Part shown: in pieces, positions 4,317-58,689 of the stretch
How the letters are laid out: every line of letters begins with the position of its first letter
How positions within the stretch are numbered: position 1 is the stretch's first letter
Assembly (NCBI RefSeq): GCF_006345805.1
Contig: NC_043009.1
Span: 10,106,001 to 10,170,000 of the forward strand
DNA: 64,000 nucleotides
Direction of reading: 5' to 3'
Source of the DNA: Octopus sinensis
Lineage: Eukaryota
Translations under genes and position numbers: made by a program
The notes under the pieces: model-generated
Told to the model about the DNA's origin: nothing
Seen by the model: the letters and a program-made list of their open reading frames with translations, nothing else
Databases searched by the model: none

Positions 4317-4357
<41 letters not shown>

Positions 4358-9968: not shown

Positions 9969-11532
9969 TTAATTGTTTGTCGTAGACCCGTTAAGAAGTG
10001 GCTTGTATTTTGTAATAAAGAGATTTTCTTTACTTATTCGTTGTCTCGAGGTTGTATCGTCCCTAAATTGGTAGAGGGGGAAATTCTGAAGTTTGGTGTT
10101 TTTTTGTTGGCGCAAGTATCTATGTGTTGGCTAAAAGCTATTTTTCTGTTTTGGGGAATTTTTATCTGGGATCTGTGCAGGGCCATTCGTTTACGCAAAC
10201 CATTTTTTGTTTGGCCTATGTACTGCTCTTGACACCCGGAGCAGGTTAGTGAGTATATTAGGTTCTCCGAAGCATATGTGAAGTTGCTTTTCACTGTAAA
10301 CCGTTGTCCCTGTTTGAAGGAGAACTCTGATCCCTCAATTAGATAGTCGCATATCCCGCAATTGGGTCTTCCACATTTTTTTACTGTCGGCTTCTGTGTT
10401 GAAGAGTGAATTCGGGCTTGTGTAAGGAGACTTTTCATGGATCTAGGCTGTCTTTTGCTTTTTATGATCGTGTGTGTTTGGAGGATTGTGTTCATTCTGT
10501 GGTCTTTTTTTAGGAGGGGTATGTTGTGGAGGATGGTGTCGAAGGCTTCGTTATTGAGAGGGTTGTGTGTGGAGATGTATGGTAAGGCTTTTGGTTGTAA
10601 GTTTTTCTTTGATTTGGGATGTCTCAGTTCCTTGATGTTAAGTTGAAGGGCACGTTGAATGCACTTGTCAATAAGTGAAGGTGGATAGTTCCTGGTGATT
10701 AGGGTATCTTTTAGTTCTTGTAGTCGTGTGTCTCTGGTGTTTGCGTTAGAGACTATAGTGCATATCCTTTTTGCTAGATTGAAGGGGATATTCATCCTGG
10801 TGTGTCTGGGTGGCATGAATTGAATGGAAGATATTGCTTAGAGTCTGTAGGCTTATGGTATATGTCTGTTTCTATTATATTATTAGCTTTCTTAATGAGG
10901 ATATCGAGGAAGGGGAGTTGTTGTTGGCTATATTCCATCGTGAATTGGATGTTTACGTCCAGTCCGTTTAAAATTTTCTGGAATTCTATGAGTTTTTCTA
11001 TATTTTTATGCCAAAGGATGAAACAGTCATCTAGATATCTCTTCCAGTTGTTTTCTATGTAGATGGAGAAAGGGCTGCCATATCTTTCTAGAACCTTACG
11101 ATACAGACTGATCTCTAGGTATCCTATGACTAGGTTGGCAAAGGAGGGGGCCATTCGTGTACCCATCGCAGTCCCCGATTTTTGTCGGTAGAAGTTGTCA
11201 TTGAAGGCGAAGAAGTTATTTTCCAGGATGAATTTAACCCCTTCTATCACAAATTCTTTTTTGATGCGGTGTGGTAGTTCGTTGGCGTGATTCTCTAGCC
11301 AGAATTGGATTGCCTCTAGTCCTAGGATGTGGGGGATATTGGAGTAGAGGTTGACTACATCGAAGGATATCAGTATGGTGTTTTTGTTTATAGTATTCGG
11401 TAGGTGATTGAGCATATCTAAGTCGTCCCTTATATAGCTTTTGACATGTTTGAGGAGTGGTTTTAACAGGGTGTCTAAAAAGTTACTGAGGCGGTGGATT
11501 TCGCATGCGGGACCTGCTATTATGGGTCTCAA
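9969..11532 (-). pseudogene. PLE reverse transcriptase-GIY-YIG endonuclease ORF, two apparent 1-bp frameshifts
   Basis: GTAMGTRMAPSFANL, WKRYLDDCF, PYISTHNP, CGRPNCGIC, NLIYSLTCSGCQEQYIGQT; frame shifts at ~10810 and ~10075, and the C-terminus ..KENLFITKYKPLLN continues to a stop at 9969. Confidence 0.92.
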
Positions 11533-17298: not shown

Positions 17299-17302
17299 TA
17301 TG

Positions 17303-17600
17303 GTGTTGCACGGACGATCGCTAGATCGTGGCTTCGATTCCCGGATAGAGCGGCGCGTTGCCTTTTTGGTCAAACCACTTCATTTTATGATGCTCCTGTC
17401 TACTTAGTTGTAAATAGGTAACCTTGCAACGGACTAGCCTCCCGATCAGGGAGGAACGCTGTCTTGCTCGCCCAGCGGGTAATGATGCCTCCTCACCAAG
17501 CCAGCGGGGTGGAATCATCCAAAAACTGAAACGATGCCATGAGTATTGTGATCAGCGACGCATAACAGTATTCGACAGTCTTGTCGATTACGATCACGTG
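17303..17600 (+). mobile_element. Decayed tRNA-derived SINE (family E)
   Basis: B-box-like GCTTCGATTCCC; tail AGCCAGCGGGGTGG...CAGCGA shared with 58281-58580. Confidence 0.6.
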
Positions 17601-22934: not shown

Positions 22935-23169
22935 ACCTATTTCTTTACTACTCACAAGGGGCTAAACACAGAGAGGACAAACAAGGACAGACAAACGGAT
23001 TAAGTCGGTTATATCGATCCCAGTGCGTAACTGGTACTTATTTAATCGACCCCGAAAGGATGAAAGGCAAAGTCGACCTCAGCGGAATTTCAACTCAGAA
23101 CGTAGCGGCAGACGAAATACGGCTATGCATTTCGCCCGGCGTGCTACCGTTTCTGCCAGCTCGCCGCCT
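22935..23169 (-). mobile_element. SINE family A (tail 1)
   Basis: Head GGCGGCGAGCTGGCAGAA, B-box-like GAGTTGAAATTCC, core, tail ending AAAGAAATAGGTAT. Confidence 0.9.
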
Positions 23170-23779: not shown

Positions 23780-23985
23780 AAGGCAGCGAGCTGGTAAAAT
23801 AGTTAACAACCCGGACAAAATGTTTAGCGGCATTTCTTTAGGGTTTCCGTTCTGAGTTCAAATTTCACCGAGGTCGAATATGCCTTTCATCCTTTCGGGG
23901 TCAATAAATTACTGAAACATTGGGGTCGATGTAATCGACAAGTCCCCTCCCCTCAAATTTCAGGCCTTGCGCCCTCAGTTGAAAT
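23780..23985 (+). mobile_element. SINE family A (tail 2)
   Basis: AAGGCAGCGAGCTGG head, GAGTTCAAATTTC, core, CAAATTTCAGGCCTTG tail. Confidence 0.85.
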
Positions 23986-26070: not shown

Positions 26071-26277
26071 CTAAAGGCACAAGGCCTGGAATTTTGGGGG
26101 AGGGGACTAGTCGAATACATCGACTCCACTGTTTCACTGGTACTTTAATTTATCGACCGCGAAAGGATGAAAGGTAAAGTCGACCTCGGCGGAATTAGAA
26201 CTCAGAACGTAGCGATAGACGAAATACCGCTATGCAGTTCGCCCAGCGTGCTAATGATTCTGCAAGCTCACCGCCTT
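26071..26277 (-). mobile_element. SINE family A (left member of an inverted pair)
   Basis: Family-A head at 26277, tail 2. Confidence 0.88.
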
Positions 26278-26338
26278 AATAATATTAATAACAACAACAA
26301 CAACAACAACAATAATAATAATAATTATTATTATCATT

Positions 26339-26540
26339 AAAGTGGCGAGCTGGCAGAAACGTTAGCACGCCGGGCGAAATGCATTGCGGTATTTCGTCTG
26401 CCGTTAAGTTCTGAGTTCAAATTCCTCCGAGGTCGACTTTGCCTTTCATCCTTTCGGGGTCGATTAAATAAGTACCAGTTACGCATTGGGGTCGTTTTAA
26501 TCGACTAGTCCCCTTCTTCCTATTGTGCCTAGAGTGGATA
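26339..26540 (+). mobile_element. SINE family A (right member of an inverted pair)
   Basis: Family-A head at 26339, tail 2. Confidence 0.88.
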
Positions 26541-27456
26541 TAATTATTATTGCCATTGTGCAATATAGATGACGTGATACGTTTTCTGTTGGTGAACTTT
26601 CAATGAAGTGTAATGTATGTGTTTAGGTTTCACTCTCACTCACCCAATACCTGCAACTGTCTCACTCATTCTTCTCTCTCATATAATACAGTCGTGCCCT
26701 TTTAGTGATAGCATACACCCTCTCTATTTCTCTCTCATTCCTTCCTTTCTACGCTCTCATAGTCTAATCTTTTTATTCTATATTTGCAATAAACAGCCTG
26801 TTCAATATGTAGCTAGCTGCAAGTTGAGATCTGTACATTGTGACAAAAACCAAATGGAAAACATTGAAAGGAAAATTTCAAAAGATTAGTTCACTGTCCT
26901 ATTGGGTTTCACGAAACTAATCGAATAACGATTAGTTTGCTGAGAATAATGAAAGCGAGCCAACAGTTGGCTTAAAGGCTAAACACGATATTCATCCGTG
27001 TCTGTGTGACTAAACGTTAACATATCACCCAAAAGAATGCACATTACTCGATAAATCCAACGCAGAGCTAATATTATAACATCAACGGCGACAATAGGCA
27101 AGATCAACGTTATTGAATAACAACAAACGAAAGAAGATGAGCAAATAAATAGATAGATAAATAGAATTGATAAATAAAAGGTAAAAGCTTGAGTAAACGG
27201 ACTGAGAGGGAATCTGAAGTATTCAGAAATAATTGACATTCGATAAAGACGTTTAAAATCCTTGCATGAAAAGATATTAAAACAGAGACACTTCTCCTTG
27301 GCACAGAGTCATATAATTTAACTCAGATATAGAACGGACATTTATCAGCATCAGTGAAAAGTCTTTCACAGTATGAACTAAAGTTAGAACGTGTGGCAGT
27401 TATTTAGCCATGGGTGTGCTACCGCTTACGAAGCAATGATAATATTAAATTATTTT

Positions 27457-27862
27457 AAGGCGGCGAGCTGGCAGAATCGTTTGCAAGGCGTGGCGAAATG
27501 CGTAGCGGTATTTCGTCTGCCGCTATGTTCTGAGTTCAAATTCCGCCGAGGTCGACTTTGCCTTTCATCCTTTCGGGGTCAATTAAATAAGTACCAGTTA
27601 CGCACTGGGGTCGATATAATCGACTTAATCCGTTTGTCTGTCCTTGTTTGTCCTCTCTGTGTTTAGCCCCTTGTGGGTAGTAAAGAAATAGGTATTTCGT
27701 CTGCCGCTACGTTTCTGAGCTCAAATTCCGCCGAGGTCGACTTTGCTTTTCATCCTTTCGGTGTCAATAGATTAAGTGCCAGCTGCGTACTGGGGTAGAT
27801 CTAATCGATTGGTCGCCATCCCCAAAATTTCGGGCCTTGCGCCTAGAGTAGAAAAGAATATT
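27457..27862 (+). mobile_element. SINE family A, dimeric form (tail 1, core, tail 2)
   Basis: Core repeated after AAAGAAATAGGTATTTCGTC. Confidence 0.9.
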
Positions 27863-27872
27863 TTATTATTTT

Positions 27873-28087
27873 AAGGCAGCGAGCTGGCAGATTCGTTAGC
27901 ACGCCGGGCAAAATGCTTAGCGGTGTTTCATCGGTCTTTACGTTATGAGTTCAAATTCCGCCGAGGTCGATTTTGCCGTTGATCCTTTCCGGGTTGATAT
28001 AATAAGCATCAGTTTTGTGCTGGGATCGATGTTATCGACTTACCTACTCCCCCGACATTACTGGTCTTGTGCCAGAATTTGAATCAG
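27873..28087 (+). mobile_element. SINE family A
   Basis: Head, B-box, core and decayed tail 2. Confidence 0.85.
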
Positions 28088-29172: not shown

Positions 29173-31286
29173 CACTGGGCAAGAAAATTTTTTTTTATAT
29201 CTGGTGCCGGGAATATTTCAACGAACTCCTAAGTGATTTTGCCTGCTAAATTAAAAATAACTTCAGTTTTTCTGTACCAAGTCTAGTTTTCTGACTAGAC
29301 CTAACAGAGTAAGTATTTTATTCATACAAAAGGCATATAGTAAGAATCAATAAAGAGGACGTAACACAAAACAAAACAAACTACAAATAGAAATTCAAAA
29401 TTGAAAATGCACATTGGTTAAGATTTTTGGCAGAAAATTCAAGGAATAAATCTGCGATTCTTTGTGCACCGTGAATATTGAGCAACAGGGAGTATCTCAT
29501 TTTAAACACCAGCAATAGTCCACCATCATCATAACATTCCAGCATCTTTGGTACCGAGTTTCTATCTCCTTGATGTCCTGATGGAATTGTTCGCCTTGTT
29601 CATCGTTAACATCGAGATTTTTAGGAAAATAATCAATATGACTAAAAAGATACTGCGCCAATATCACGAAAAGTTGATATCAAGTTGGTAACAAGGTCTT
29701 TATGGTTTTAACTGTCGTGTTTCCCTAGGAAATTTTGCACTACGTCTGCTTTGCAGACGTAGTGCAAATGCTTCATTTTCGCTCATCGTTTTCATGAAAT
29801 TTGTGTCCTTCAAGAGCTTACGGATCTGTGGTCCATCGAAAATCCCTGCTTTAAGCTTTTCAATTGTCAAGTCTGGAAATATACTGAAAATAAACTTGAA
29901 GCACTCTCTATTTTTGTCAAGAGCTTTGACGAATTGCTTGATCAATTCGAGTCTGATGTGTAAAGGGGGAAAATGATCTTATCTCGCTCAACTAAAGGTT
30001 CTTCCAATACATTGGCTGCTCTACATTGATCCATATTTGTTCGAGGCCAGTCTTTCTTAACATAGTAGTTTCTTTGGTCTCTACTGTCCCACATGCAAAG
30101 AAAGCATGGGTATTTGGTTTAACTAGCAGGCTGTTCCATGAGAAAATTCACCATCTTTAAGTCAACGCAGATGACTCATTTATGATCGTGATATAGTATC
30201 TTCTCTAAAACCAACTTAATTTCTCCATATTTTTCCTTCAGAGTTGTTGAGTGGCCGAGTGGGACAGAGCCATACACATTTCCGTTGTGTACACATTTTA
30301 AACTACGCTTAGAGCTGTTTATGAAAAAAGACACCATTCCTCTGGTTTGTACTCCTTAATGCCAAGTTTATTAAGAAGTCCACTGACATCTCTGCAGTAA
30401 ATCAGTTCTTCCCCTTTTGTGAAGAAAGGAACTCTTCATGCTGACTCCGATAAAAGGTTATACGGACACCATTTTCTAGAAGATTCTTCTCTTTCAGTCG
30501 AGAAGCCAACTGTTCTGCAGAATTTTGGGGGGAGGTTCAAGTCACGAATTAGATCATTCAAATCTGGGAGAATAGATGAGGAAAAGTCGAAATTGAAAAG
30601 TCTTGATCTCTAGTGTCTACTTCAGGTGATGAATCTTCTTTTGTTGAGAATAAATTTATCTGAGGCAAAACATTGAAGACAGGAACCGGAAACTCTTCAC
30701 TGTGTGGAACCGGTCTAATAGCAGAGGCAAGATTAGGATACACAAGCGTTTGTCGATTTTTCGGTTAATACTCTTCAAATGTAGGTTACAAGAATAGCAG
30801 TCATCCACGTGATTATAGGGCTCCCACCATACCATTGGTATAGCAAACCTCATACCGTTCCTTGTCCCTTTAGTCCATTGTCGCAAATGTTCTGTACATT
30901 GTTTGCAGACGCTATGCGGTGCTCAGTATTTATCTTGGTCTCCAAGCCTGACCCCAAAATATGCTTTTTCGATTTTCAGGTAATGTGTATTCGCCACAAA
31001 CAACAAAACACATTTGGAGAATTAACGAAACACTTGCTCATTTTCTATTGCTTTGTTCACCACAACATCTAAAACGTATGGAAAAAGAAAAGATAAAATT
31101 TAGAATTAGAATAGGGTAACGAACACTGCGTACTGGACGTACACACATACATAGTGACTGTAGGGATGGTCAATGTCTTAAAAACTATATCTGATGGATT
31201 AAAAAGGTTATATCAGGATTCAAGACACCGATTTTGTAAAGTATGATGTCTATATCCTAAACACCAAAAAACTTGAAGACCAAGTG
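29173..31286 (-). mobile_element. Chapaev3-like (CMC superfamily) DNA transposon, decayed
   Basis: CAC...GTG termini flanked by a TTA duplication (29170-29172 and 31287-31289); transposase remnants inside. Family name is from recalled motifs. Confidence 0.75.
29470..31041 (-). pseudogene. Transposase pseudogene (many stops and frameshifts)
   Basis: AYFGVRLGDQDK, WEPYNHVDDCYSC, YPNLASAIRPVPH, VDLKM, TKYPCFLCMWDSR, KQFVKALD..GIFDGPQIR, DEQGEQFHQDI..DYCW. Confidence 0.85.
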
Positions 31287-31898
31287 TTATAATTTGCAGC
31301 CCTTTCTCCAATAAAAGACACCCTCTAATGACGGTTAAACATTGATTTATCAGCCAGTTTATTATCTTAGAACACTATAAATCGTTATTCATTACCTTTC
31401 TTCTATGAATTCATTGCCATTCGTTTGCAACTGTGAAGATTTCTTCACTAAAAATTCTGACTCTAAGCCATTTGTACTTAATTTAACAATTGATACATAT
31501 GCTTCGAATTACTTAATAGTCAATATGCTTTATCTTCCAGAGTACATCTCCTGTATGGTTTGTAACTTCATACTTAGCCACATGGTGTATCACAGCTTTG
31601 CAGATCCTTCGACGACTGTCAAACGGAATGCAGATTATGCAGATTACACGCAGTTGTCTCTTTCACCCACACAGAAAAACAGTGTATGGTCTTTGTACTG
31701 GAATTAATTTAACCAATGTTTCTGGTTCCTTCATAGAGTAAATCCTGTACAGATTTTTACTCTTCACTAAAGATTCTTTGCAAACATTTGTGTAAGCATT
31801 ACATGTTTCTTCTTCCAGATACCTCTAATTCTCATATATTTTATTTTTATTTTCCTCTTTAACAAAACAAAACATTCGACTCTTCAACCTATCAAAAT

Positions 31899-32058
31899 CA
31901 GAAGTGGCTTTGTGGTATGTAACATGCTTACCAACCACCTGGTTCCGGGTTCAATCCCATTGCATGGCACCTTGGGCAAGTGTCTTCTACTATAGCCTCG
32001 GGCCGACCAAAGCCTTGTGAGTGGATTTGGTAGACGGAAACTGAAAAACCCGTCGTAT

Positions 32059-32117
<59 letters not shown>

Positions 32118-32342
32118 GTATATGTTTGTGTGTCTGTGTTTGTCTCCCCAACATCGCTTGACAACCGATGCTGGTGTGTTTACGTCCCCGTAACTTAGCG
32201 GTTCGGCAAAAGAAACCGACAGAATAAGTACTAGGCTCCCAAAGAATAAGTCCTGGGGTCGATTTGCTCGACTAAAGGCGGTGCTCCAGCATGGCCGCAG
32301 TCAAATGACTGAAACAAGTAAAAGAGTGAAAGAATAAAAGAG
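31899..32342 (+). mobile_element. SINE family B, full length
   Basis: All family-B modules present. Confidence 0.9.
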
Positions 32343-33830
32343 ATGATCCTGCACATTATGTGTATCTGTGCTTAGGTTTCACATTGTGTTTAAAATCCTT
32401 TTACATAAAATCCTTCGACAATATTTGTTCTAGAATGAATCTGATCTTTATTTCTATTTATTTAGTCCCTTTCAGAAACATAGAAATCTAATGGATATTT
32501 GAGATGAAATTACACAATCTTTCCTATTTGCTGTTAATTTATCTATGAACACATTCTGTTACTTATGAACCGAGTTTCCATTTTAGCACCATCATTAGTG
32601 CCACGGCCATTATTCATATGTTTCAAAATAATAGAACTAGTTGGAGTAAATTCCTTGATACCGATGGCTTTTGCTGTTAATTATTATGAACAAATTCTGT
32701 TATTTATACCATTTTAGCGCCATCATCAGCACCACAGTCATTATACTTACGCTTCAGAATAATGGAACTAGTTGAACTAAATTCTTTGAAATCGTTGGCT
32801 TGTGGTTCATTATTAAAATTCTTGAGTATAAGAATTTTGCTGTTTGTTTATTCCAAGTTTATTATTGCAGCTGTCTATTTTATCTACTATTTTTATAAGA
32901 TTAACTAGTTTCCCGTTTAAAGCTGTTGCATTTAATCGTTAATCTATTTAAAACATATTAGGTCTTTCAGTTGTTAGTCTTTTGTCTATTATATTCTCAT
33001 GTTAGCTTTATAGCTCTTTTTTCTCAGAATAACGCCTCACTACATTTCTGATTTATTTTTTATCTCTGTGAATTATATGCCGCTCTGACCAGTTCATCTT
33101 GACCTTCTTTGATTTGGCCAGTACAAGAATCTGTCAGCGTGCAGAGTTGACACGAAAGCCTCAAGATTATCAGTTGATCAACTAGAAATAGCAACCAATT
33201 CTACTTCAAATCATATCTTACCAACTTAAATAAGATTAGATAATTATTATGCGGATAATAGTTATAATGGAATATCCCCTCCTACGTGATGAGTGGTATG
33301 TGGTAGTCGTTCCAAATACTATGACGTAGGACTTCGAGTCAGTGTCAGTCGAACAGTCGGTTATAGATAGATAGTCGTGTCTTACTATACTGCTATACCG
33401 GAGTAGGTGTTATAATTACCCGACAGAGGATTACTACAGTGGCGATTAGGAATTAACAATCTCATGGGGAATTAACAAATTTATGAGGATTCAACAGACT
33501 CACAAGTAGTTACGAAACTCACAAAGGTTTTTTTGTGCGAATTTTACTGTATACAAAATCGTAAAATTATCGAAGATTTGTTGGCCGGTTTGCTTGAGTT
33601 GCAAAAACAACAACAACAACAATTATTACTACAACAAATGCTACAATTAAGGAATAGCAAGTCGTCAAAAAATGCTGAAAGAAAATGTTGAAGGATTTCC
33701 ATGTTGGATACCCTGGTATTTCGAGGATGAAAGCTTTGATGTGTAGTTACGTGAACTGGCCAAAAATGGATACAGAAATCGAAAATTTAGTGAAAGGCTG
33801 CCGAGGAAGTGCGCTAGCGGCAAAATTACC

Positions 33831-34062
33831 TATTTCTTTACTACCCACAAGGGGCTAAACACACAGAGGACAAACAAGGACAGACAAACGGATTAAGTCG
33901 ATTATATCGACCCCAGTGCGTAACTGGTACTTATTTAATCGACCCTGAAAGGATGAATGGCAAAATCGACCTCGGCGGAATTTGTGCTCAGAACATAAAG
34001 ACAGACGAAATATCGCGAAGCATTTCGCCCGGCGTGCTAACGTTTCTGCCAGCTCGCCGCCT
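33831..34062 (-). mobile_element. SINE family A (tail 1), part of the chimeric insert
   Basis: Complete head, core and tail 1. Confidence 0.9.
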
Positions 34063-34091
34063 CTTTTTTTGTCTTCTCTCTCTTTTTTTTT

Positions 34092-34197
34092 AATATTTGC
34101 TACTACCACCGAGATCTGCACCCGCGGTCGGCTTCACCCGGGGACTCGCGACCGCGGGTCCATGCACGCCGCGGCGCCCTCCTACTCGACCGGGCAC
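34092..34197 (-). rRNA. 28S rRNA fragment (~106 bp, retroposed piece, not a gene)
   Basis: Minus strand GAGTAGGAGGGC...GGTGCAGATCTCGGTGGTAGTAGCAAATATT matches a conserved eukaryotic LSU segment; GC-rich relative to its flanks. Confidence 0.9.
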
Positions 34198-35534
34198 AAT
34201 TACCGACGATTAAAAGTGAACCTTGACCAAAAGTAGATGTTCCATGGTCAAGACGACACATCGATTTCGCTGGTCCCTTAAACGGTTTATACTAATTAGT
34301 GGTAGTAGATAGTTTCTCTAAATGACCAGAAATTTGTAAGTGTAAAAAGCCAACCTCCTCAACTGCAACAAACTTTCTACATGAGCTGTTTGTGAGATTT
34401 GGCGTCCCTGACGCGTTAGTGTCTGACAATGGAACGCCATTTGTGTATTTTGAATTTTGTAAAACGTTTTCTGTAGAACATGTAACTACGGCGCTGAACC
34501 ATCCCAAATCTAACAGACAAGCAGACGCTTTGTCGATGCGTTCAAGAGAGCCCCAAGAAAGTCGAATAAGGAAGTCGCGGATGAGGTAGCTCTACGACAA
34601 TTCTTAAGAGTATACCACCGTGTGACACCAAATCCAAACACACCAGTAGGTATATCACCAGTGGAGCTGATGTTTGCGAGGAAAATAAAATCAGTCTTCG
34701 ACAAATTTCTGACTGGTAAGAAAAGAAAAACTGCAATGGATAACACAGCAAGATATTTCAAAATGGGTGAAAATGTATTTGTTAGGGCATATAAGAACGG
34801 AAAACAAGATAACGTGATTACCAAACGCATAGGGAAAATGCTATATTTGGTTAAAGGAAGAAAAGGAGTATAGAAAAGACACCTGAATAAAAAAAAAAAA
34901 GATTTGCTGAGAGCGAACCCAAGAGAATAGGAGAACCAATGGAATGGTTGTATGATACTTTTCAAGTACCAACGCAAGTTAATGTGTAACTGTATAAAAA
35001 AGAAACCTAAAAAACGGGAGGTGGGGTGATGTAAAAATTATTGCTAATAAAAAGAAATAAATTACACTTTCTAAGAAAAAAAGAAGACTTAAAAGGGGCT
35101 AATAGTAATAATAGAACACCCCTCTCACGTGACGAGTGATATGTTCTAGTCGTTACAAATACTGTGACGTAGAAAGTCGAGGTAGTGTCAGTCGAGTAGT
35201 CAGTCATAGATAAGTAGTTGTGTCTTGTCTAACTAACTATACTGCTATACCGGAGTGGGCGTATAACAATCGACAGAGGATTACAACAATAAAATAGTTC
35301 TGCAAATGCCAAAAAAGACAGAAATATCACTGATGGTATACTCTTGATCATAGAACTGATCGATCAGGGTTAACCTCGGAATAAAAATATATCAGGCACA
35401 TAAAGTGACTGAAATAACCTTTATGTGATCTATCAATGTTTAAGGGAAGCTAACAGTTTTTGCGTGATATTGAATGGTTAATACGTAACTTACACGCTGT
35501 TAGGATAAAATTATTTTACTAAATTCTTCTATAT

Positions 35535-35686
35535 GGTCGCAGGCGTGGCTTGCTTGAAAAGCTTGCTTCACATCTACATAGTTCCGGGTTCAGTCCCATT
35601 GTATGGTTCCTTGGGAAAATGCCTTCTACCATAGCCTCGAGCAGACTAAAGTCTTGTGAGTGGATTTGAAAGAAGCCCCTCGTATA
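35535..35686 (+). mobile_element. SINE family B 5' half
   Basis: GGTTCAGTCCC B-box-like motif and GTGAGTGGATTT..GAAAGAAGCCC. Confidence 0.8.
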
Positions 35687-36060
35687 CACACACACACACA
35701 CAAAGAAGCCCCTCGTATGCACACACACACACACACACAAAGAAGCCCCTCGTATACACACACACACACACACACAAAGAAGCCCCTCGTATACACACAC
35801 ACACACACAAAGAAGCCCCTCGTATACACACACACACACACACAAAGAAGCCCCTCGTATACACACACACACACACACACAAAGAAGCCCCTCGTATACA
35901 CACACACACACACACACACAAAGAAGCCCCTCGTATACACACACACACACCACACAAAGAAGCCCCTCGTATACACACACACACACACACAAAGAAGCCC
36001 CTCGTATACACACACACACACACACAAAGAAGCCCCTCGTATACACACACACACACATAC
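35669..36060 (+). repeat. Minisatellite: 11 x AAAGAAGCCCCTCGTATA + variable (CA)n
   Basis: Counted directly; the unit derives from the SINE-B motif GAAAGAAGCCCGTCGTATA. Confidence 0.95.
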
Positions 36061-36113
36061 ACACACACTTATATATTTATACATGTGTGTGTGTGTGTGT
36101 GTTTATGAATATC

Positions 36114-39039: not shown

Positions 39040-39470
39040 TTGGATGTGTATTTTCTGCCATAGTTTGGCTGTGTCTATTGTGGCTTTTGAAACCAGGTTT
39101 TTGAGCACAAGTGCTTTAGAAAGCTGCTACGCATCTCGTGTACACAAAATACAGAACGAAAAGCTTTGCCAAGTAGCAAGTCAACAAACACACTGGCAGA
39201 CAGGAACCACTCATGCGCAGGTAAAACAGACGAAAGCTTGCCTGGTATGGTTACGTATCCCGCTACAACTTCCTTCCAAGACTACTCTTCAGGGCAAAAC
39301 CTATAAAGGGCAACAGAGAGGCAGATAGAAAATCCTGATTTGACTACATCAAGGATTGGACAAATCTCACCATCACTTCCTTGCTTCATATAACAGAGAA
39401 CAGAAACCAGCCGCGACGGCTGACTGCATTGGGGTCTAGAGCGACACCCCAACGACTGACCGCACCAGTC
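39040..39470 (+). mobile_element. RTE-clade LINE 3' fragment
   Basis: Frameshifted AFE..CFRKLLRIS..KLAWYG..LQG..GR.RK.W..IKDW. Confidence 0.8.
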
Positions 39471-39619
39471 GCAAAAAAAACTTGACAAATGATGAATATA
39501 GTTTGATATTGACCAGTGAATCGTTAGAGCATTGAATAAAATACTCTCCGCTATTTATTTCGGATCTTATGAGCTCAAATACCACTCAAGTCGCGCCAAG
39601 ATAAACTTTGCACTTCGTC

Positions 39620-41127: not shown

Positions 41128-42289
41128 GGGGAATTCTTATGGGTGCAAAGATCAATTACACATAAGTAAAATGATTCTAGAGAATTGCCGGAGCAAAAAG
41201 AAGACCCTGAGTATGTCGTGGATAGACTGCAGGAAAGCGTTTGGTAGTGTCCCACATAATTTGATACTCAAGGCCTTTGAGATATATAAGATCTCTGCTG
41301 TCATATCCAAATTCTTACAAGGTAGCATGGTCAGGTGGGACACACGTCTCGTTCTAAACCATAGTAATGGGATGAGCCAAACTAACAACATCAACGTCAA
41401 ACGAGGCATCTTTCAAGGTGACTCCCTCTCCCCATTACTCTTTAGCATGGCACTGATCTCACTCTCACGCCAACTAAATAACACCAGGTATGGGTTCAAA
41501 GTTTGCAATACGACAATAAACCTTCTGTTTAATATGGACGATCTGAAGCTGTTTGTTAGAAATGACAAAGAGCTAGTGGGGCTGCTAACAAATGTTAAAG
41601 AATTCGCTAATAACATCGGGATGGACTTTGGCCTTGATAAGTGTGCTAAAGCAACTTTTGTAAGAAGCAAGCTCAGGCAAACAGCTTCCATTAATTTGGA
41701 TGCCGACACTACCATCAAGGAGCGTGACCCACAAGAAGATTACAAATACCAGGGGATAAACGAAGGAGATGGTATATTACATGCTACTATGAAGGAACAA
41801 ATAAGAAAAAAATATTGCAGGGGAATAAGACTCGGCTCTAAAAATCGCATCGACGCCATTAACACCCTGGCACTTCCAGTGGTCCAATATGGTTTTAATA
41901 TCATTAAATAGGAATCTTACAGAATTCCAACGCCTGGGCAGGAAGTCAAGAAAAATACTAACTTCTTAGAACATGCACCATCCAAAAGCAGATGTTGGTC
42001 GTCTGTACCTATCTAGAAGTAATGGGGGAAGAGGAATGATGCATGCAGAACTGTGTCATAAGACCACCACAATAGCAATGAACAGGGACTTGTCTAGTAC
42101 AGAGGACTGGACGCTGCGATTTGTGTGCAAACACGAAAGCAGCAAAAAATCACATTCTATTATCAGGCAAGCTTGCAAATTCGCAATGGTACTTGGCATT
42201 AACCCTCAAATAGTTGAAGAACCTGAAACCACTGCCACAAAACAAGCAAAATGGATCAAGCAGACCGCAGAAATGAAGGAGCAGAAACA

Positions 42290-42290
<1 letters not shown>
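41128..42290 (+). mobile_element. R4/Dong-like RT fragment between (AAC/AAT)n arrays
   Basis: ORF 41171-41911: WIDCRKAFGSVPH, RGIFQGDSLSPLLF, NMDDLKLF, DKCAK, YKYQGI; continues as HPKADVGRLYLSRSNGGRG. Confidence 0.9.
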
Positions 42291-42354
<64 letters not shown>

Positions 42355-42374
42355 TAATGATAATAATAATGATG

Positions 42375-42448
<74 letters not shown>
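42290..42448. repeat. (AAT)n microsatellite
   Basis: Directly visible. Confidence 0.95.
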
Positions 42449-42972
42449 CCTTTCTACTATAAGCACAAGGTCTGAAAGTTTGTGGGAGAGTGTTTGTCGA
42501 TTACATCAACCCCCATACTTGACTGGTAGTTATTTTATTGACCCCGAAAGGATGAAAGGTGCAGCGTGTGCTTCAACAGGGTGCAAACTTATTCTCGAAC
42601 GGTGCACCGTATCTTCAAGCAAGATACTTCACTCATGTTTCCCCAATCCACTCAGCTAAAAATAGGTACCACCAGCAGCAGCAGAAGTTGACGCTATCTT
42701 TGTCAACCATGTGACAGGCAGATATCCATCCAGTGTAGAGTGAAAACATCTTCATGGAAGAAATAGCGGCCATCCAATATCTATTTCCGCTATAGAACAG
42801 TCATCTTCATCGACCAAGTTTCCTCATTGACCCCTATATGATGAATATATCAATAGTGGACGGATTAAAGGGGGATTTTTCTTTCTGAACATAATTGCAG
42901 CGTGGAAGGAGTTTATAAGCCATTTAAGAAACACACAAAACCGTTAGATTCACATCAACATTTAAATTTAAT

Positions 42973-55493: not shown

Positions 55494-55690
55494 AAGGTGG
55501 CGCGCTGGCAGAACCGTTAGCTCGCTGAGTGAAATGCTTAGCGATATTTCACTCGTCACTACCTTCTAAATTCAAATTCCGCGGTGGTCGACTTTGCCTT
55601 TCATCCGTTCGTAGTCGATAAATTATGTATCACTGAAACCCTGAGGTCCTTCCCCAAATTTCAGGACCTGTACTTTCAGTAGAAATTATT
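55494..55690 (+). mobile_element. SINE family A, decayed
   Basis: Head, core and tail 2. Confidence 0.8.
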
Positions 55691-58280: not shown

Positions 58281-58580
58281 CCATGTCCGACTAGGCTATC
58301 AGATGTTGCTACACATCGCTGGTCACAATGCGCTTCGCATTGTTTTAGCCTACAAATGACGCCACCCCGCTGGCTAAGCGAGCAGGCCAACAGAAGAAAG
58401 AGTGAGAGAAAGTTGTGGCGAAAGAGTACTGCAGGGATCGCCACCACACCATGCTGGAGCCTCGTGGAACTTTAGGTGTTTTCGCTCACTAAACACTCAC
58501 AACGCCCGGTCTGGGAATCGAAACCGCGATCCTACGACTGCGAGCCCGCTGCCCTGACCACTGGGCCATTGTGCCTCCAC
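58281..58580 (-). mobile_element. SINE family D (tail type 2)
   Basis: TGGCCCAGTGG A-box, GGTTTCGATTCC B-box; body shared with 14993, tail shared with 17303. Confidence 0.8.
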
Positions 58581-58689
58581 ACATGCATATGTATACATAT
58601 AGAAATGCATATATTATATATACATATGTATGAACATATATCGATATAGATATGCATGTGTATATGATGCCTGCATGTATGTATATTTT

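What the first reader, a model, noticed from the sequence alone, without database searches (positions are those of the whole stretch)
33824..34204. 28S rRNA-SINE chimera inserted as a single event into a Gypsy integrase
The minus strand reads 28S fragment (34197-34092), A-rich linker, complete SINE-A (34062-33831). The whole unit is flanked by AATTACC at 33824-33830 and 34198-34204. Removing it with one copy restores the integrase frame (..AAKL-PTIKSEP*PKVDVPWSR). This shows co-insertion, either by an RT template switch from SINE RNA onto an oligo-A-tailed rRNA fragment or from a 28S-headed SINE lineage.
Basis: partly seen in the sequence, partly recalled or inferred. Interest (0 to 1): 0.75.

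Follow-up and report, generated by a model that had tools for sequence, protein, structure and literature searches.

The report
28S rRNA piece fused to SINE
A 367-base insert in a dead octopus retrotransposon gene is a piece of 28S ribosomal RNA with an A-rich tail joined to a complete SINE, almost certainly pasted in as one reverse-transcription event; this kind of chimeric retrocopy is already known in mammals, and this is a clean single example in a cephalopod.

Summary
On the minus strand, 34197-34092 is a eukaryotic LSU rRNA fragment (Rfam RF02543, model positions 1369-1471 of 3401, E 3.6e-11). 34091-34063 is a 29-nt A/G-rich tract. 34062-33831 is a full-length copy of a SINE with at least 12 other copies or fragments in the window. 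AATTACC occurs at both ends.

The flanks are the zinc-finger and core domains of a decayed, 5'-truncated Ty3/Gypsy-type integrase from an octopod. Four paralogous integrase copies (Octopus bimaculoides, O. sinensis, one SRA assembly) run ungapped across the site with one copy of the 7-mer. So the 367 bp is an insertion and the repeat is a real target-site duplication. Neither part has its own duplication.

The first four bases of the duplication (GGTA) match the SINE family's 3' end (..AAATAGGTAT), so priming most likely started on the SINE RNA.

Best explanation: one target-primed reverse transcription that copied the SINE RNA to its 5' end, then jumped to an oligoadenylated 28S fragment.

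I could not test whether this is a single locus or a 28S-headed SINE lineage. The DNA collections I could scan hold no octopus DNA, and the protein searches and ORF look-ups found nothing.

Comparable 28S/LINE-1 chimeras are published, so this is a new member of a known kind, of modest interest.

The parts
33678..33830 (+). Left flank: N-terminal part of a decayed Ty3/Gypsy-type integrase (HHCC zinc-binding domain). Homology to octopus paralogs begins at 33678.
   Evidence: Pfam Integrase_H2C2 PF17921, E 1.1e-8. BLASTN to L001-L005 starts at 33678/33683. Best protein relatives are Octopus bimaculoides 'K02A2.6-like' at 73%.
33824..33830 (.). Target-site duplication, copy next to the SINE 3' end (AATTACC; GGTAATT on the minus strand). 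GGTA overlaps the SINE family's 3' terminus GGTAT.
   Evidence: Read directly. Paralogs carry a single copy. The SINE 3' consensus is ..AAAGAAATAGGTAT.
33831..34062 (-). Full-length SINE ('SINE-A'), 232 nt, 5.8% from a 5-copy consensus.
   Evidence: Four other full-length copies at 89-92% identity, plus at least 8 partial or related copies in the window. Related copies are present in O. sinensis locus L002.
34063..34091 (-). A/G-rich linker AAAAAAAAAGAGAGAGAAGACAAAAAAAG (22 A, 6 G, 1 C). Interpreted as a post-transcriptional A-rich tail on the 28S fragment.
   Evidence: Sequence read. It is not alignable to LSU rRNA: the score drops 3.7 bits and posteriors are 0.2-0.6 when it is included. It is absent upstream of every other SINE copy.
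34092..34197 (-). Internal fragment of eukaryotic 28S (LSU) rRNA, 106 nt, containing one complete GC-rich hairpin and ending at ..GGUGGUAGUAGCAAAUAUU.
   Evidence: Rfam RF02543 model 1369-1471/3401, 48.5 bits, E 3.6e-11. One substitution (GATCTCGG against consensus GAUCUUGG) at a strongly conserved position of the Rfam consensus, consistent with pseudogene decay.
34198..34204 (.). Target-site duplication, copy next to the 5' end of the 28S fragment (AATTACC).
34205..34973 (+). Right flank: integrase catalytic core (rve) and downstream pol remnant, with in-frame stops and a frameshift near 34520.
   Evidence: Pfam rve PF00665, E 5.1e-10. Translation. BLASTN to paralogs reaches 34650-34973.

Best explanation
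This is a bipartite chimeric retrocopy made in one target-primed reverse transcription (TPRT) event.

A LINE-encoded endonuclease/reverse transcriptase nicked the antisense strand of an already dead Ty3/Gypsy-type integrase fragment at ..GTC|GGTAATT.. The freed DNA end paired with the 3' end of a SINE-A RNA (..AAAUAGGUAU) through the GGTA microhomology and primed cDNA synthesis. The enzyme copied the SINE RNA to its 5' end. Instead of finishing, it jumped end-to-end onto the 3' end of a second RNA: a 28S rRNA fragment carrying a roughly 29-nt A/G-rich tail, of the kind described for rRNA decay intermediates. It copied the tail and 106 nt of 28S before the cDNA was joined to the other side of the staggered break, which produced the 7-bp duplication.

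Shown here: the identity of the parts, the insertion, the single duplication and the microhomology. Inferred: the order of copying, the jump itself, and that the A-rich tract was an RNA tail. The insert has no evident function. It is a neutral scar in a dead transposon.
For: Identity of the parts.

A single insertion relative to four uninterrupted paralogs, each with one copy of the 7-mer. Frame restoration.

No direct repeats bracket the SINE alone or the 28S-plus-linker alone.

The 28S sequence stops at an internal position (model 1471) and is followed directly by an A-run where genuine rRNA continues CAAAUGAGAAC (consensus). That is the signature of a tail added to a cleaved RNA.

The SINE is complete at its 5' end, as expected for an end-to-end jump.

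The duplication begins with the SINE's own 3' bases. The only other copy with a clear duplication shows the same pattern: c23169, GGTAT[T/A]AGGACATGATA. This ties the priming step to the SINE RNA.

No other SINE copy, of at least 12 in the window and two in L002, carries the 28S piece or the linker.

Two independent SINE-SINE composites joined exactly at a GGTAT(T) microhomology fit an RT that often switches templates.

Precedents in the literature: 28S rRNA/LINE-1 chimeras, mostly sense-oriented, attributed to template switching or RNA ligation (bioRxiv 10.1101/2025.02.02.635956); polyadenylated 28S fragments with homo- and heteropolymeric A-rich tails (PMC1474067); and 5' addition of snRNA sequences to SINEs (PMC4494074).
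Against: Only one locus was seen. The copy number of the junction in the host genome could not be measured, so a propagating 28S-headed lineage or a source-locus read-through is not excluded.

Four of the seven duplicated bases could come from the SINE RNA, which leaves as few as 3 bp of unambiguous duplication.

The linker is 24% non-A. It could be a decayed pure poly(A), a GA microsatellite, or unrelated filler rather than a heteropolymeric RNA tail.

The LINE partner and its template-jumping ability are unknown. No LINE in the window shares the SINE's tail.

Confidence: 0.6

Rival explanations
1. The unit is a copy of a pre-existing composite. Either there is a 28S-headed SINE lineage, or a master locus exists in which a SINE-A sits directly downstream of an A-tailed 28S retropseudogene (or inside an rDNA copy). 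A transcript starting upstream was then retrotransposed with 5' truncation inside the 28S part (5' transduction).
For: The outcome would look the same: one duplication around the whole unit. SINEs with rRNA- or snRNA-derived heads do exist: SINE28 (PMC4994717) and SINEU (PMC4494074). This SINE family also forms composites.
Against: None of the other copies in the window (at least 12) or the 2 in L002 has the head or the linker.

SINE-A seems to integrate at GGTAT-like sites with the duplication directly upstream of its 5' end. The bases upstream of the focal SINE are a plain A/G tract with no such motif.

The 28S piece is an internal fragment, not the 3'-terminal part used by SINE28.

The sample is tiny (about 90 kb of octopus DNA), so this evidence is weak.
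Confidence: 0.2
2. Two separate insertions happened to abut. Either an A-tailed 28S retropseudogene landed first and the SINE later inserted exactly between its tail and the 3' duplication copy, or the SINE landed first and the 28S piece later inserted exactly at its 5' boundary.
For: The 3' duplication copy GGTAATT resembles the SINE's preferred GGTAT(T) priming site, so it could have attracted a later SINE insertion. A-tailed 28S retropseudogenes are known (PMC4994717).
Against: The second event would need to land to the base at the junction and leave no duplication of its own. No repeat brackets either part alone, whereas another family member has an 11-17-bp duplication.
Confidence: 0.08
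3. The two RNAs were joined before reverse transcription (RNA ligation of the A-tailed 28S fragment to the SINE RNA 5' end), and the chimeric RNA was then copied in one ordinary TPRT. Alternatively, the 28S cDNA was captured as filler during repair of the 5' junction.
For: This gives the same final structure. The preprint on 28S/LINE-1 chimeras lists RNA ligation alongside template switching as a possible route.
Against: From general knowledge: a Pol III SINE transcript carries a 5' triphosphate, which is a poor substrate for the RtcB-type ligation proposed for U6/L1. Nothing in the sequence separates this from a template jump.
Confidence: 0.1
4. The junction is an assembly or read chimera.
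For: rRNA-derived reads are abundant contaminants in libraries.
Against: There is a precise 7-bp duplication of the target, exact collinearity of both flanks with four paralogs, an A-rich tail, and decay substitutions in both the 28S piece and the SINE. These are features of a real, aged retro-insertion.
Confidence: 0.02

Closest known systems
[quoted passage not shown]
   Same: A sense-oriented piece of a cellular non-coding RNA sits at the 5' side of a retroelement copy. One target-site duplication surrounds the whole, and the parts have no duplication of their own. The structure is attributed to RT template switching or RNA ligation. The 28S pieces in primates are 50-482 nt and come from anywhere along 28S.
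   Different: Here the 3' partner is a full-length non-poly(A) SINE rather than a 5'-truncated L1. The host is a cephalopod, whose LINE partner is unknown; RTE-clade LINEs are the ones reported as active in octopus (PMC9115989). A 29-nt A/G-rich tail lies between the two parts, whereas classical U6/L1 junctions are direct.
SINE28 (Longo et al. 2015, PMC4994717) and other SINEs with rRNA or snRNA heads (SINE3, SINEU)
   Same: 28S-derived sequence mobilised by LINE machinery. A-rich tails directly follow 28S sequence.
   Different: SINE28 derives from the 3' end of 28S, is a multi-copy family and is Pol III-transcribed. The piece here is internal (model 1369-1471/3401), it is seen once, and it sits on top of an already complete SINE.
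Polyadenylated 28S rRNA decay intermediates (Slomovic et al. 2006, PMC1474067)
   Same: An internal 28S 3' end is followed by a non-genomic A-rich tract containing some G and C, like the heteropolymeric tails described there.
   Different: Those are RNAs in human cells. Here there is only a DNA fossil, so tail composition may have changed by mutation or slippage.
Tripartite MINE-WEIRD-Mg-SINE chimeras of Magnaporthe (PMC2104539)
   Same: Chimeric retrocopies involving a SINE, explained by LINE RT template jumps outside mammals (listed).
   Different: Different partners and phylum. I did not read the paper in detail.

Membership tests
LINE-mediated chimeric retrocopy (template-switch or bipartite chimera) | Two unrelated RNA-derived parts fused head-to-tail in the same orientation | tested here: met
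   28S fragment and SINE are both on the minus strand and contiguous apart from a 29-nt A-rich tract.
LINE-mediated chimeric retrocopy (template-switch or bipartite chimera) | One target-site duplication flanks the whole unit; the empty site is known | tested here: met
   AATTACC lies at both ends. Four paralogs show an ungapped empty site with one copy. 3-7 bp of the duplication are unambiguous.
LINE-mediated chimeric retrocopy (template-switch or bipartite chimera) | No separate duplication around either part | tested here: met
   The longest shared k-mers at the boundaries of each part are misplaced 5-mers.
LINE-mediated chimeric retrocopy (template-switch or bipartite chimera) | The 3' part carries the end used for priming by the RT | tested here: met
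   The SINE 3' consensus ..AAATAGGTAT overlaps the start of the duplication GGTAATT. The same pattern is seen in copy c23169.
LINE-mediated chimeric retrocopy (template-switch or bipartite chimera) | Unique junction: an independent event rather than a propagating family | not testable with these tools
   No octopus genome is searchable as DNA. Junction, SINE and 28S patterns all gave 0 hits in the metagenome and prokaryote collections. Protein-route searches were empty.
SINE with 28S-derived head (SINE28-like lineage) | Many copies share the same head-body junction | tested here: inconclusive
   None of the other SINE copies in the window (at least 12) or the 2 in L002 has it, but only about 90 kb of octopus DNA was available.
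SINE with 28S-derived head (SINE28-like lineage) | [quoted passage not shown] | tested here: not met
   The fragment is internal, model 1369-1471 of 3401. Promoter activity was not tested.
Stand-alone processed 28S retropseudogene | rRNA fragment plus A-rich tail bracketed by its own duplication | tested here: not met
   Fragment and tail are present, but the tail runs straight into the SINE 5' end, and no repeat brackets the 28S plus tail.
Ty3/Gypsy (Metaviridae-type) integrase as the insertion target | Integrase_H2C2 zinc finger followed by rve core in one frame | tested here: met
   After removal of the insert, PF17921 (E 1.5e-7) and PF00665 (E 1.2e-9) lie in one frame.
Ty3/Gypsy (Metaviridae-type) integrase as the insertion target | RT-RNase H upstream of the integrase, plus LTRs | tested here: not met
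   Nine stop-free stretches between 29506 and 32905 gave no Pfam hit; 32906-33677 was not scanned. Homology to paralogs starts at 33678. No LTR pair was found. Relatives P0003 and P0015 do carry RT_RNaseH domains upstream of the integrase, so the window copy is a truncated fragment of such an element.
tRNA-derived SINE | Head recognisable as tRNA | tested here: not met
   ARAGORN found no tRNA in the window, and Rfam gave no tRNA hit over the SINE at E<=1. A B-box-like GAGTTCAAATTCC is visible by eye only. Multi-copy, short and non-coding features of a SINE are met.

The most novel reading that the evidence does not exclude
The locus is one member of a so far undescribed class of octopus composite retroposons, in which the RT that mobilises SINE-A routinely appends A-tailed fragments of abundant RNAs (rRNA, other SINEs) to SINE 5' ends. 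Some of these composites, including a 28S-headed one, would have become new propagating SINE subfamilies. This would be a live view of how SINE heads are acquired, in a genome famous for SINE expansion.
Probability: 0.1. Interest if true: 0.6.

Novelty: new member of a known kind. Interest (0 to 1): 0.3.

Why it matters
It is a clean, fully resolved example of an rRNA-SINE chimeric retrocopy in a mollusc, with the empty site, the duplication and the priming microhomology all visible.

It suggests three things:
- The LINE machinery that drove the octopus SINE expansion can jump between RNA templates.
- A-tailed 28S decay fragments may exist in cephalopod germline or early embryonic cells.
- Such jumps are a route by which SINEs acquire new 5' modules.

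On its own it is one neutral scar in a dead transposon. Its value would come from a genome-wide count of such junctions.

Tried and rejected
(a) Rfam on the whole window, and on a 651-nt stretch, missed the 28S piece. It was found only when submitted alone.

(b) I tested whether the linker is the natural continuation of 28S (CAAAUGAGAAC..GAAGAC). Rejected: the score falls and posteriors are low.

(c) I thought the fragment's 5' end might be the start of 28S-beta at the protostome hidden break. Rejected: the break markers of Natsidis et al. lie downstream, with the first marker starting at model 1495, 23 nt after the fragment's 3' end. The octopus-specific H88 break is far away, at nt 4322/4323.

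(d) Search for RT or RNase H upstream of the integrase: no hit in the stretches scanned, 29506-32905.

(e) LTR search: only an unrelated dispersed repeat pair at 31925 and 35564.

(f) Whether L001-L005 are orthologous loci: no. Flanks are not collinear, and identity is 78-87%. They serve as paralogous empty sites only.

(g) Exact-ORF look-ups of seven window ORFs: none on record.

(h) Two protein-space searches with junction, 28S and SINE reading frames: no hits.

(i) DNA pattern scans for the junction, the SINE core and a host-like 28S 30-mer: 0 hits everywhere. The collections therefore lack octopus DNA, and the negatives say nothing about copy number.

(j) Literature search for the SINE consensus as a text string: none.

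(k) Other GC-rich islands in the window are other SINE heads or unidentified sequence, not rRNA.
Full report
**What is there**

Reading the minus strand from 34204 down to 33824 gives five parts:
- GGTAATT
- a 106-nt GC-rich block (34197-34092)
- a 29-nt tract, AAAAAAAAAGAGAGAGAAGACAAAAAAAG (34091-34063)
- a 232-nt repeat unit (34062-33831)
- GGTAATT again

The GC-rich block is a eukaryotic large-subunit rRNA fragment. Submitted on its own, it matches Rfam LSU_rRNA_eukarya over its full length (model positions 1369-1471 of 3401, 48.5 bits, E 3.6e-11). The match includes one complete internal hairpin and the conserved ..GCAGAUCU(U>C)GGUGGUAGUAGCAAAUAUU stretch. The score is 1.5 bits below the family's gathering cut-off of 50, as expected for so short a piece. 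The whole-window scan and a 651-nt scan both missed it, because a short piece of a very long model is only scored when it reaches the ends of the query.

It is the most GC-rich 80-mer in the window, 77.5% against 35.6% overall, and it has no second copy in the window.

Adding the linker to the Rfam query lowers the score to 44.8 bits, with posteriors of 0.2-0.6 over the linker. The A/G-rich tract is therefore not the natural continuation of 28S, which reads CAAAUGAGAAC.. in the model consensus.

**The SINE**

The 232-nt unit has four other full-length copies in the window at 89-92% identity, and at least eight partial or related copies. Alignment with flanks places the family's 5' end at (A)GGCGGCGAGCTGG and its 3' end at ..GTAGTAAAGAAATAGGTAT. 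The focal copy is complete at both ends and 5.8% from a 5-copy consensus.

ARAGORN and Rfam do not recognise a tRNA in it, so I call it a SINE on copy number, size and structure only. None of the other copies carries the 28S piece or the linker upstream. The two related copies in an O. sinensis locus do not carry them either.

**The host sequence and the empty site**

After deleting 33831-34204, the plus strand reads in one frame:

..HVGYPGISRMKALMCSYVNWPKMDTEIENLVKGCRGSALAAKL|PTIKSEP*PKVDVPWSRRHIDFAGP..

Pfam finds Integrase_H2C2 on the left and rve on the right. Leaving both 7-mers in place breaks the frame.

The closest proteins are 'K02A2.6-like' predictions from Octopus bimaculoides (73%), O. 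sinensis and Argonauta hians. Some relatives carry RT_RNaseH domains upstream of the integrase, which is the Ty3/Gypsy order. The window is therefore octopod DNA.

The window copy is only a decayed fragment. It has three in-frame stops and a frameshift near 34520. Homology to relatives begins at 33678. No RT or RNase H domain was found in the stretches scanned between 29506 and 32905, and no LTR pair was found.

I fetched DNA for four independent relatives: two O. bimaculoides loci, one O. sinensis locus, and one SRA assembly seen in two runs. They are 78-87% identical to the window copy. All run across the site without a gap and hold one copy of the 7-mer equivalent: AATTATT, ACTTACC, AACTATC, AATTACT. 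The protein alignment shows no gap at AKL|PTIK either.

This shows that 367 bp were inserted and that AATTACC was duplicated.

**One event or two**

No direct repeat brackets the SINE alone or the 28S-plus-linker alone.

The duplication starts with GGTA on the minus strand, and every other full-length SINE-A copy ends ..AAATAGGTAT. The one other copy with a clear duplication shows the same pattern, GGTAT[T/A]AGGACATGATA on both sides.

In target-primed reverse transcription, the nicked target strand pairs with the 3' end of the RNA. That pairing produces exactly this overlap between the element's end and the start of the duplication (established mechanism, from general knowledge). So priming at this site was on the SINE RNA, and the other copy of the same duplication lies beyond the 28S piece.

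A two-step history would need the second insertion to land to the base at the junction and leave no duplication. I rate that at about 0.08.

The cost of the microhomology is that only 3-7 bp of the duplication are unambiguously target-derived.

**Mechanism**

The 28S sequence stops at an internal position and is followed at once by an A-rich, partly G-containing tract. The SINE that follows is full length. The simplest account has three steps:
1. The RT copied the SINE RNA to its 5' end.
2. It jumped end-to-end onto the 3' end of an oligoadenylated 28S fragment.
3. It copied the tail and 106 nt of 28S, and the cDNA was then joined to the other side of the break.

A-tailed 28S fragments with homo- and heteropolymeric tails are documented in human cells as decay intermediates (PMC1474067). 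They have been invoked for 28S retro-fragments before (PMC4994717).

The fragment ends 23 nt upstream of the first conserved marker of the protostome 'hidden break' region (marker AGUGGAGAAGGGUUCCAUGU starts at model 1495). If octopus 28S has that gap, the piece comes from near the natural 3' end of 28S-alpha, which would be a plausible entry point for 3' trimming and tailing. This is speculation. The octopus-specific H88 break is elsewhere.

Two SINE-SINE composites in the window are joined exactly at a GGTAT(T) shared between the SINE-A 3' end and an internal site of the downstream unit: 27458-27808 and 5965-5555. They have different downstream units, so they are independent events. They fit an RT that readily moves to new RNA 3' ends, although insertion at internal GGTATT sites could also explain them.

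**What I could not do**

The key test is how many copies of the 28S-linker-SINE junction the host genome holds.
- The junction pattern gave no hit in the metagenome or prokaryote-genome collections.
- The SINE core and a host-like 28S 30-mer also gave none, so these collections simply lack octopus DNA.
- Searches in protein space with all reading frames of the unit found nothing.
- Seven exact-ORF look-ups found nothing on record.

So a 28S-headed SINE lineage, or 5' transduction from a source locus, stays open at about 0.2. The host 28S sequence and the true orthologous locus were not available either.

**Comparison with what is known**

Chimeric retrocopies made of a cellular RNA fused 5' to a retroelement, inside one duplication, are well known in mammals. 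A 2025 preprint reports 18 28S rRNA/LINE-1 chimeras in primates, mostly sense-oriented, 50-482 nt long, and explained by template switching or RNA ligation. 5' additions of snRNA to SINEs, and a 28S-derived SINE, are also described.

This locus differs in four ways:
- the host phylum
- a full-length, non-poly(A) SINE as the primary template
- the A/G-rich tail retained between the two parts
- the visible priming microhomology

It is a new member of a known kind.

**Verdict**

The mechanism is probable but not proven. Interest is modest, 0.3.

Noticed in passing
window 27458-27808 (+) and 5965-5555 (-): Two SINE 'dimers': a full SINE-A followed at once by a SINE that starts at its internal GGTATT (consensus position about 47). 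The GGTAT(T) is shared with the upstream unit's 3' end. The downstream units differ (SINE-B-type tail in one, SINE-A tail in the other), so these are independent events. Either the RT switched between SINE RNAs, or SINE-A inserted at internal GGTATT sites.
   Followed up: partly
window 26109-26276 (-), 26340-26506 (+), 27874-28042 (+), 55495-55648 (+), 23781-23939 (+): A second SINE subfamily ('SINE-B') shares the first ~165 nt with SINE-A but has a different 3' region (..CCCCAAAATTTCAGGCCTTGTGCC..). Most of these copies sit next to (ATT)n or (GTT)n microsatellites. 26109-28042 is a dense SINE cluster that includes a head-to-head pair.
   Followed up: partly
window 22938-23169 (-): SINE-A copy with a clear 11-bp duplication, AGGACATGATA. 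It extends to 17 bp with one mismatch if the GGTAT microhomology is counted. It is the only other copy in the window that shows the family's integration signature.
   Followed up: yes
window 10792-11532 (-) and 41171-41911 (+): ORFs with Pfam RVT_1 hits (E 8e-8 and 1.5e-17), probably LINE fragments. Neither was linked to the SINE-A tail. The neighbouring ORF 41973-42659 gives a marginal DUF2207_C hit that is probably spurious.
   Followed up: partly
window 35669-36063: Minisatellite of 11 copies of a 35-37-bp unit (AAAGAAGCCCCTCGTATACACACAC..), about 700 bp downstream of the last detectable integrase homology at 34973. It produces long spurious ORFs in all frames.
   Followed up: no
window 31904-32211, 35559-35668 and at least 8 other places: A dispersed ~300-bp repeat is also present 330 bp upstream of the integrase paralog in O. 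bimaculoides locus L001 (2381-2668). It is not an LTR pair of the integrase-bearing element.
   Followed up: partly
window ~17300-17530 and 58474-58593: GC-rich tRNA-like heads of other SINE families (for example ..GGCCCAGTGGTCAGGGCAGCGGGCTCGCAGTCGTAGGATCGCGGTTTCGATTCCCAGACCGGGCG on the minus strand at 58474-58593).
   Followed up: no
window 39400-39478: A 70-nt GC-rich piece followed by A8, with no Rfam match at E<=1 when submitted alone. Possibly another small retro-copied RNA fragment.
   Followed up: partly
window 34092-34197 (method): cmscan did not report the embedded 28S fragment at the gathering threshold, or at E<=1 within a 651-nt query. It reported the fragment only when given alone, so that truncated alignment is allowed. 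Other embedded rRNA pieces in this or other windows would be missed the same way.
   Followed up: yes
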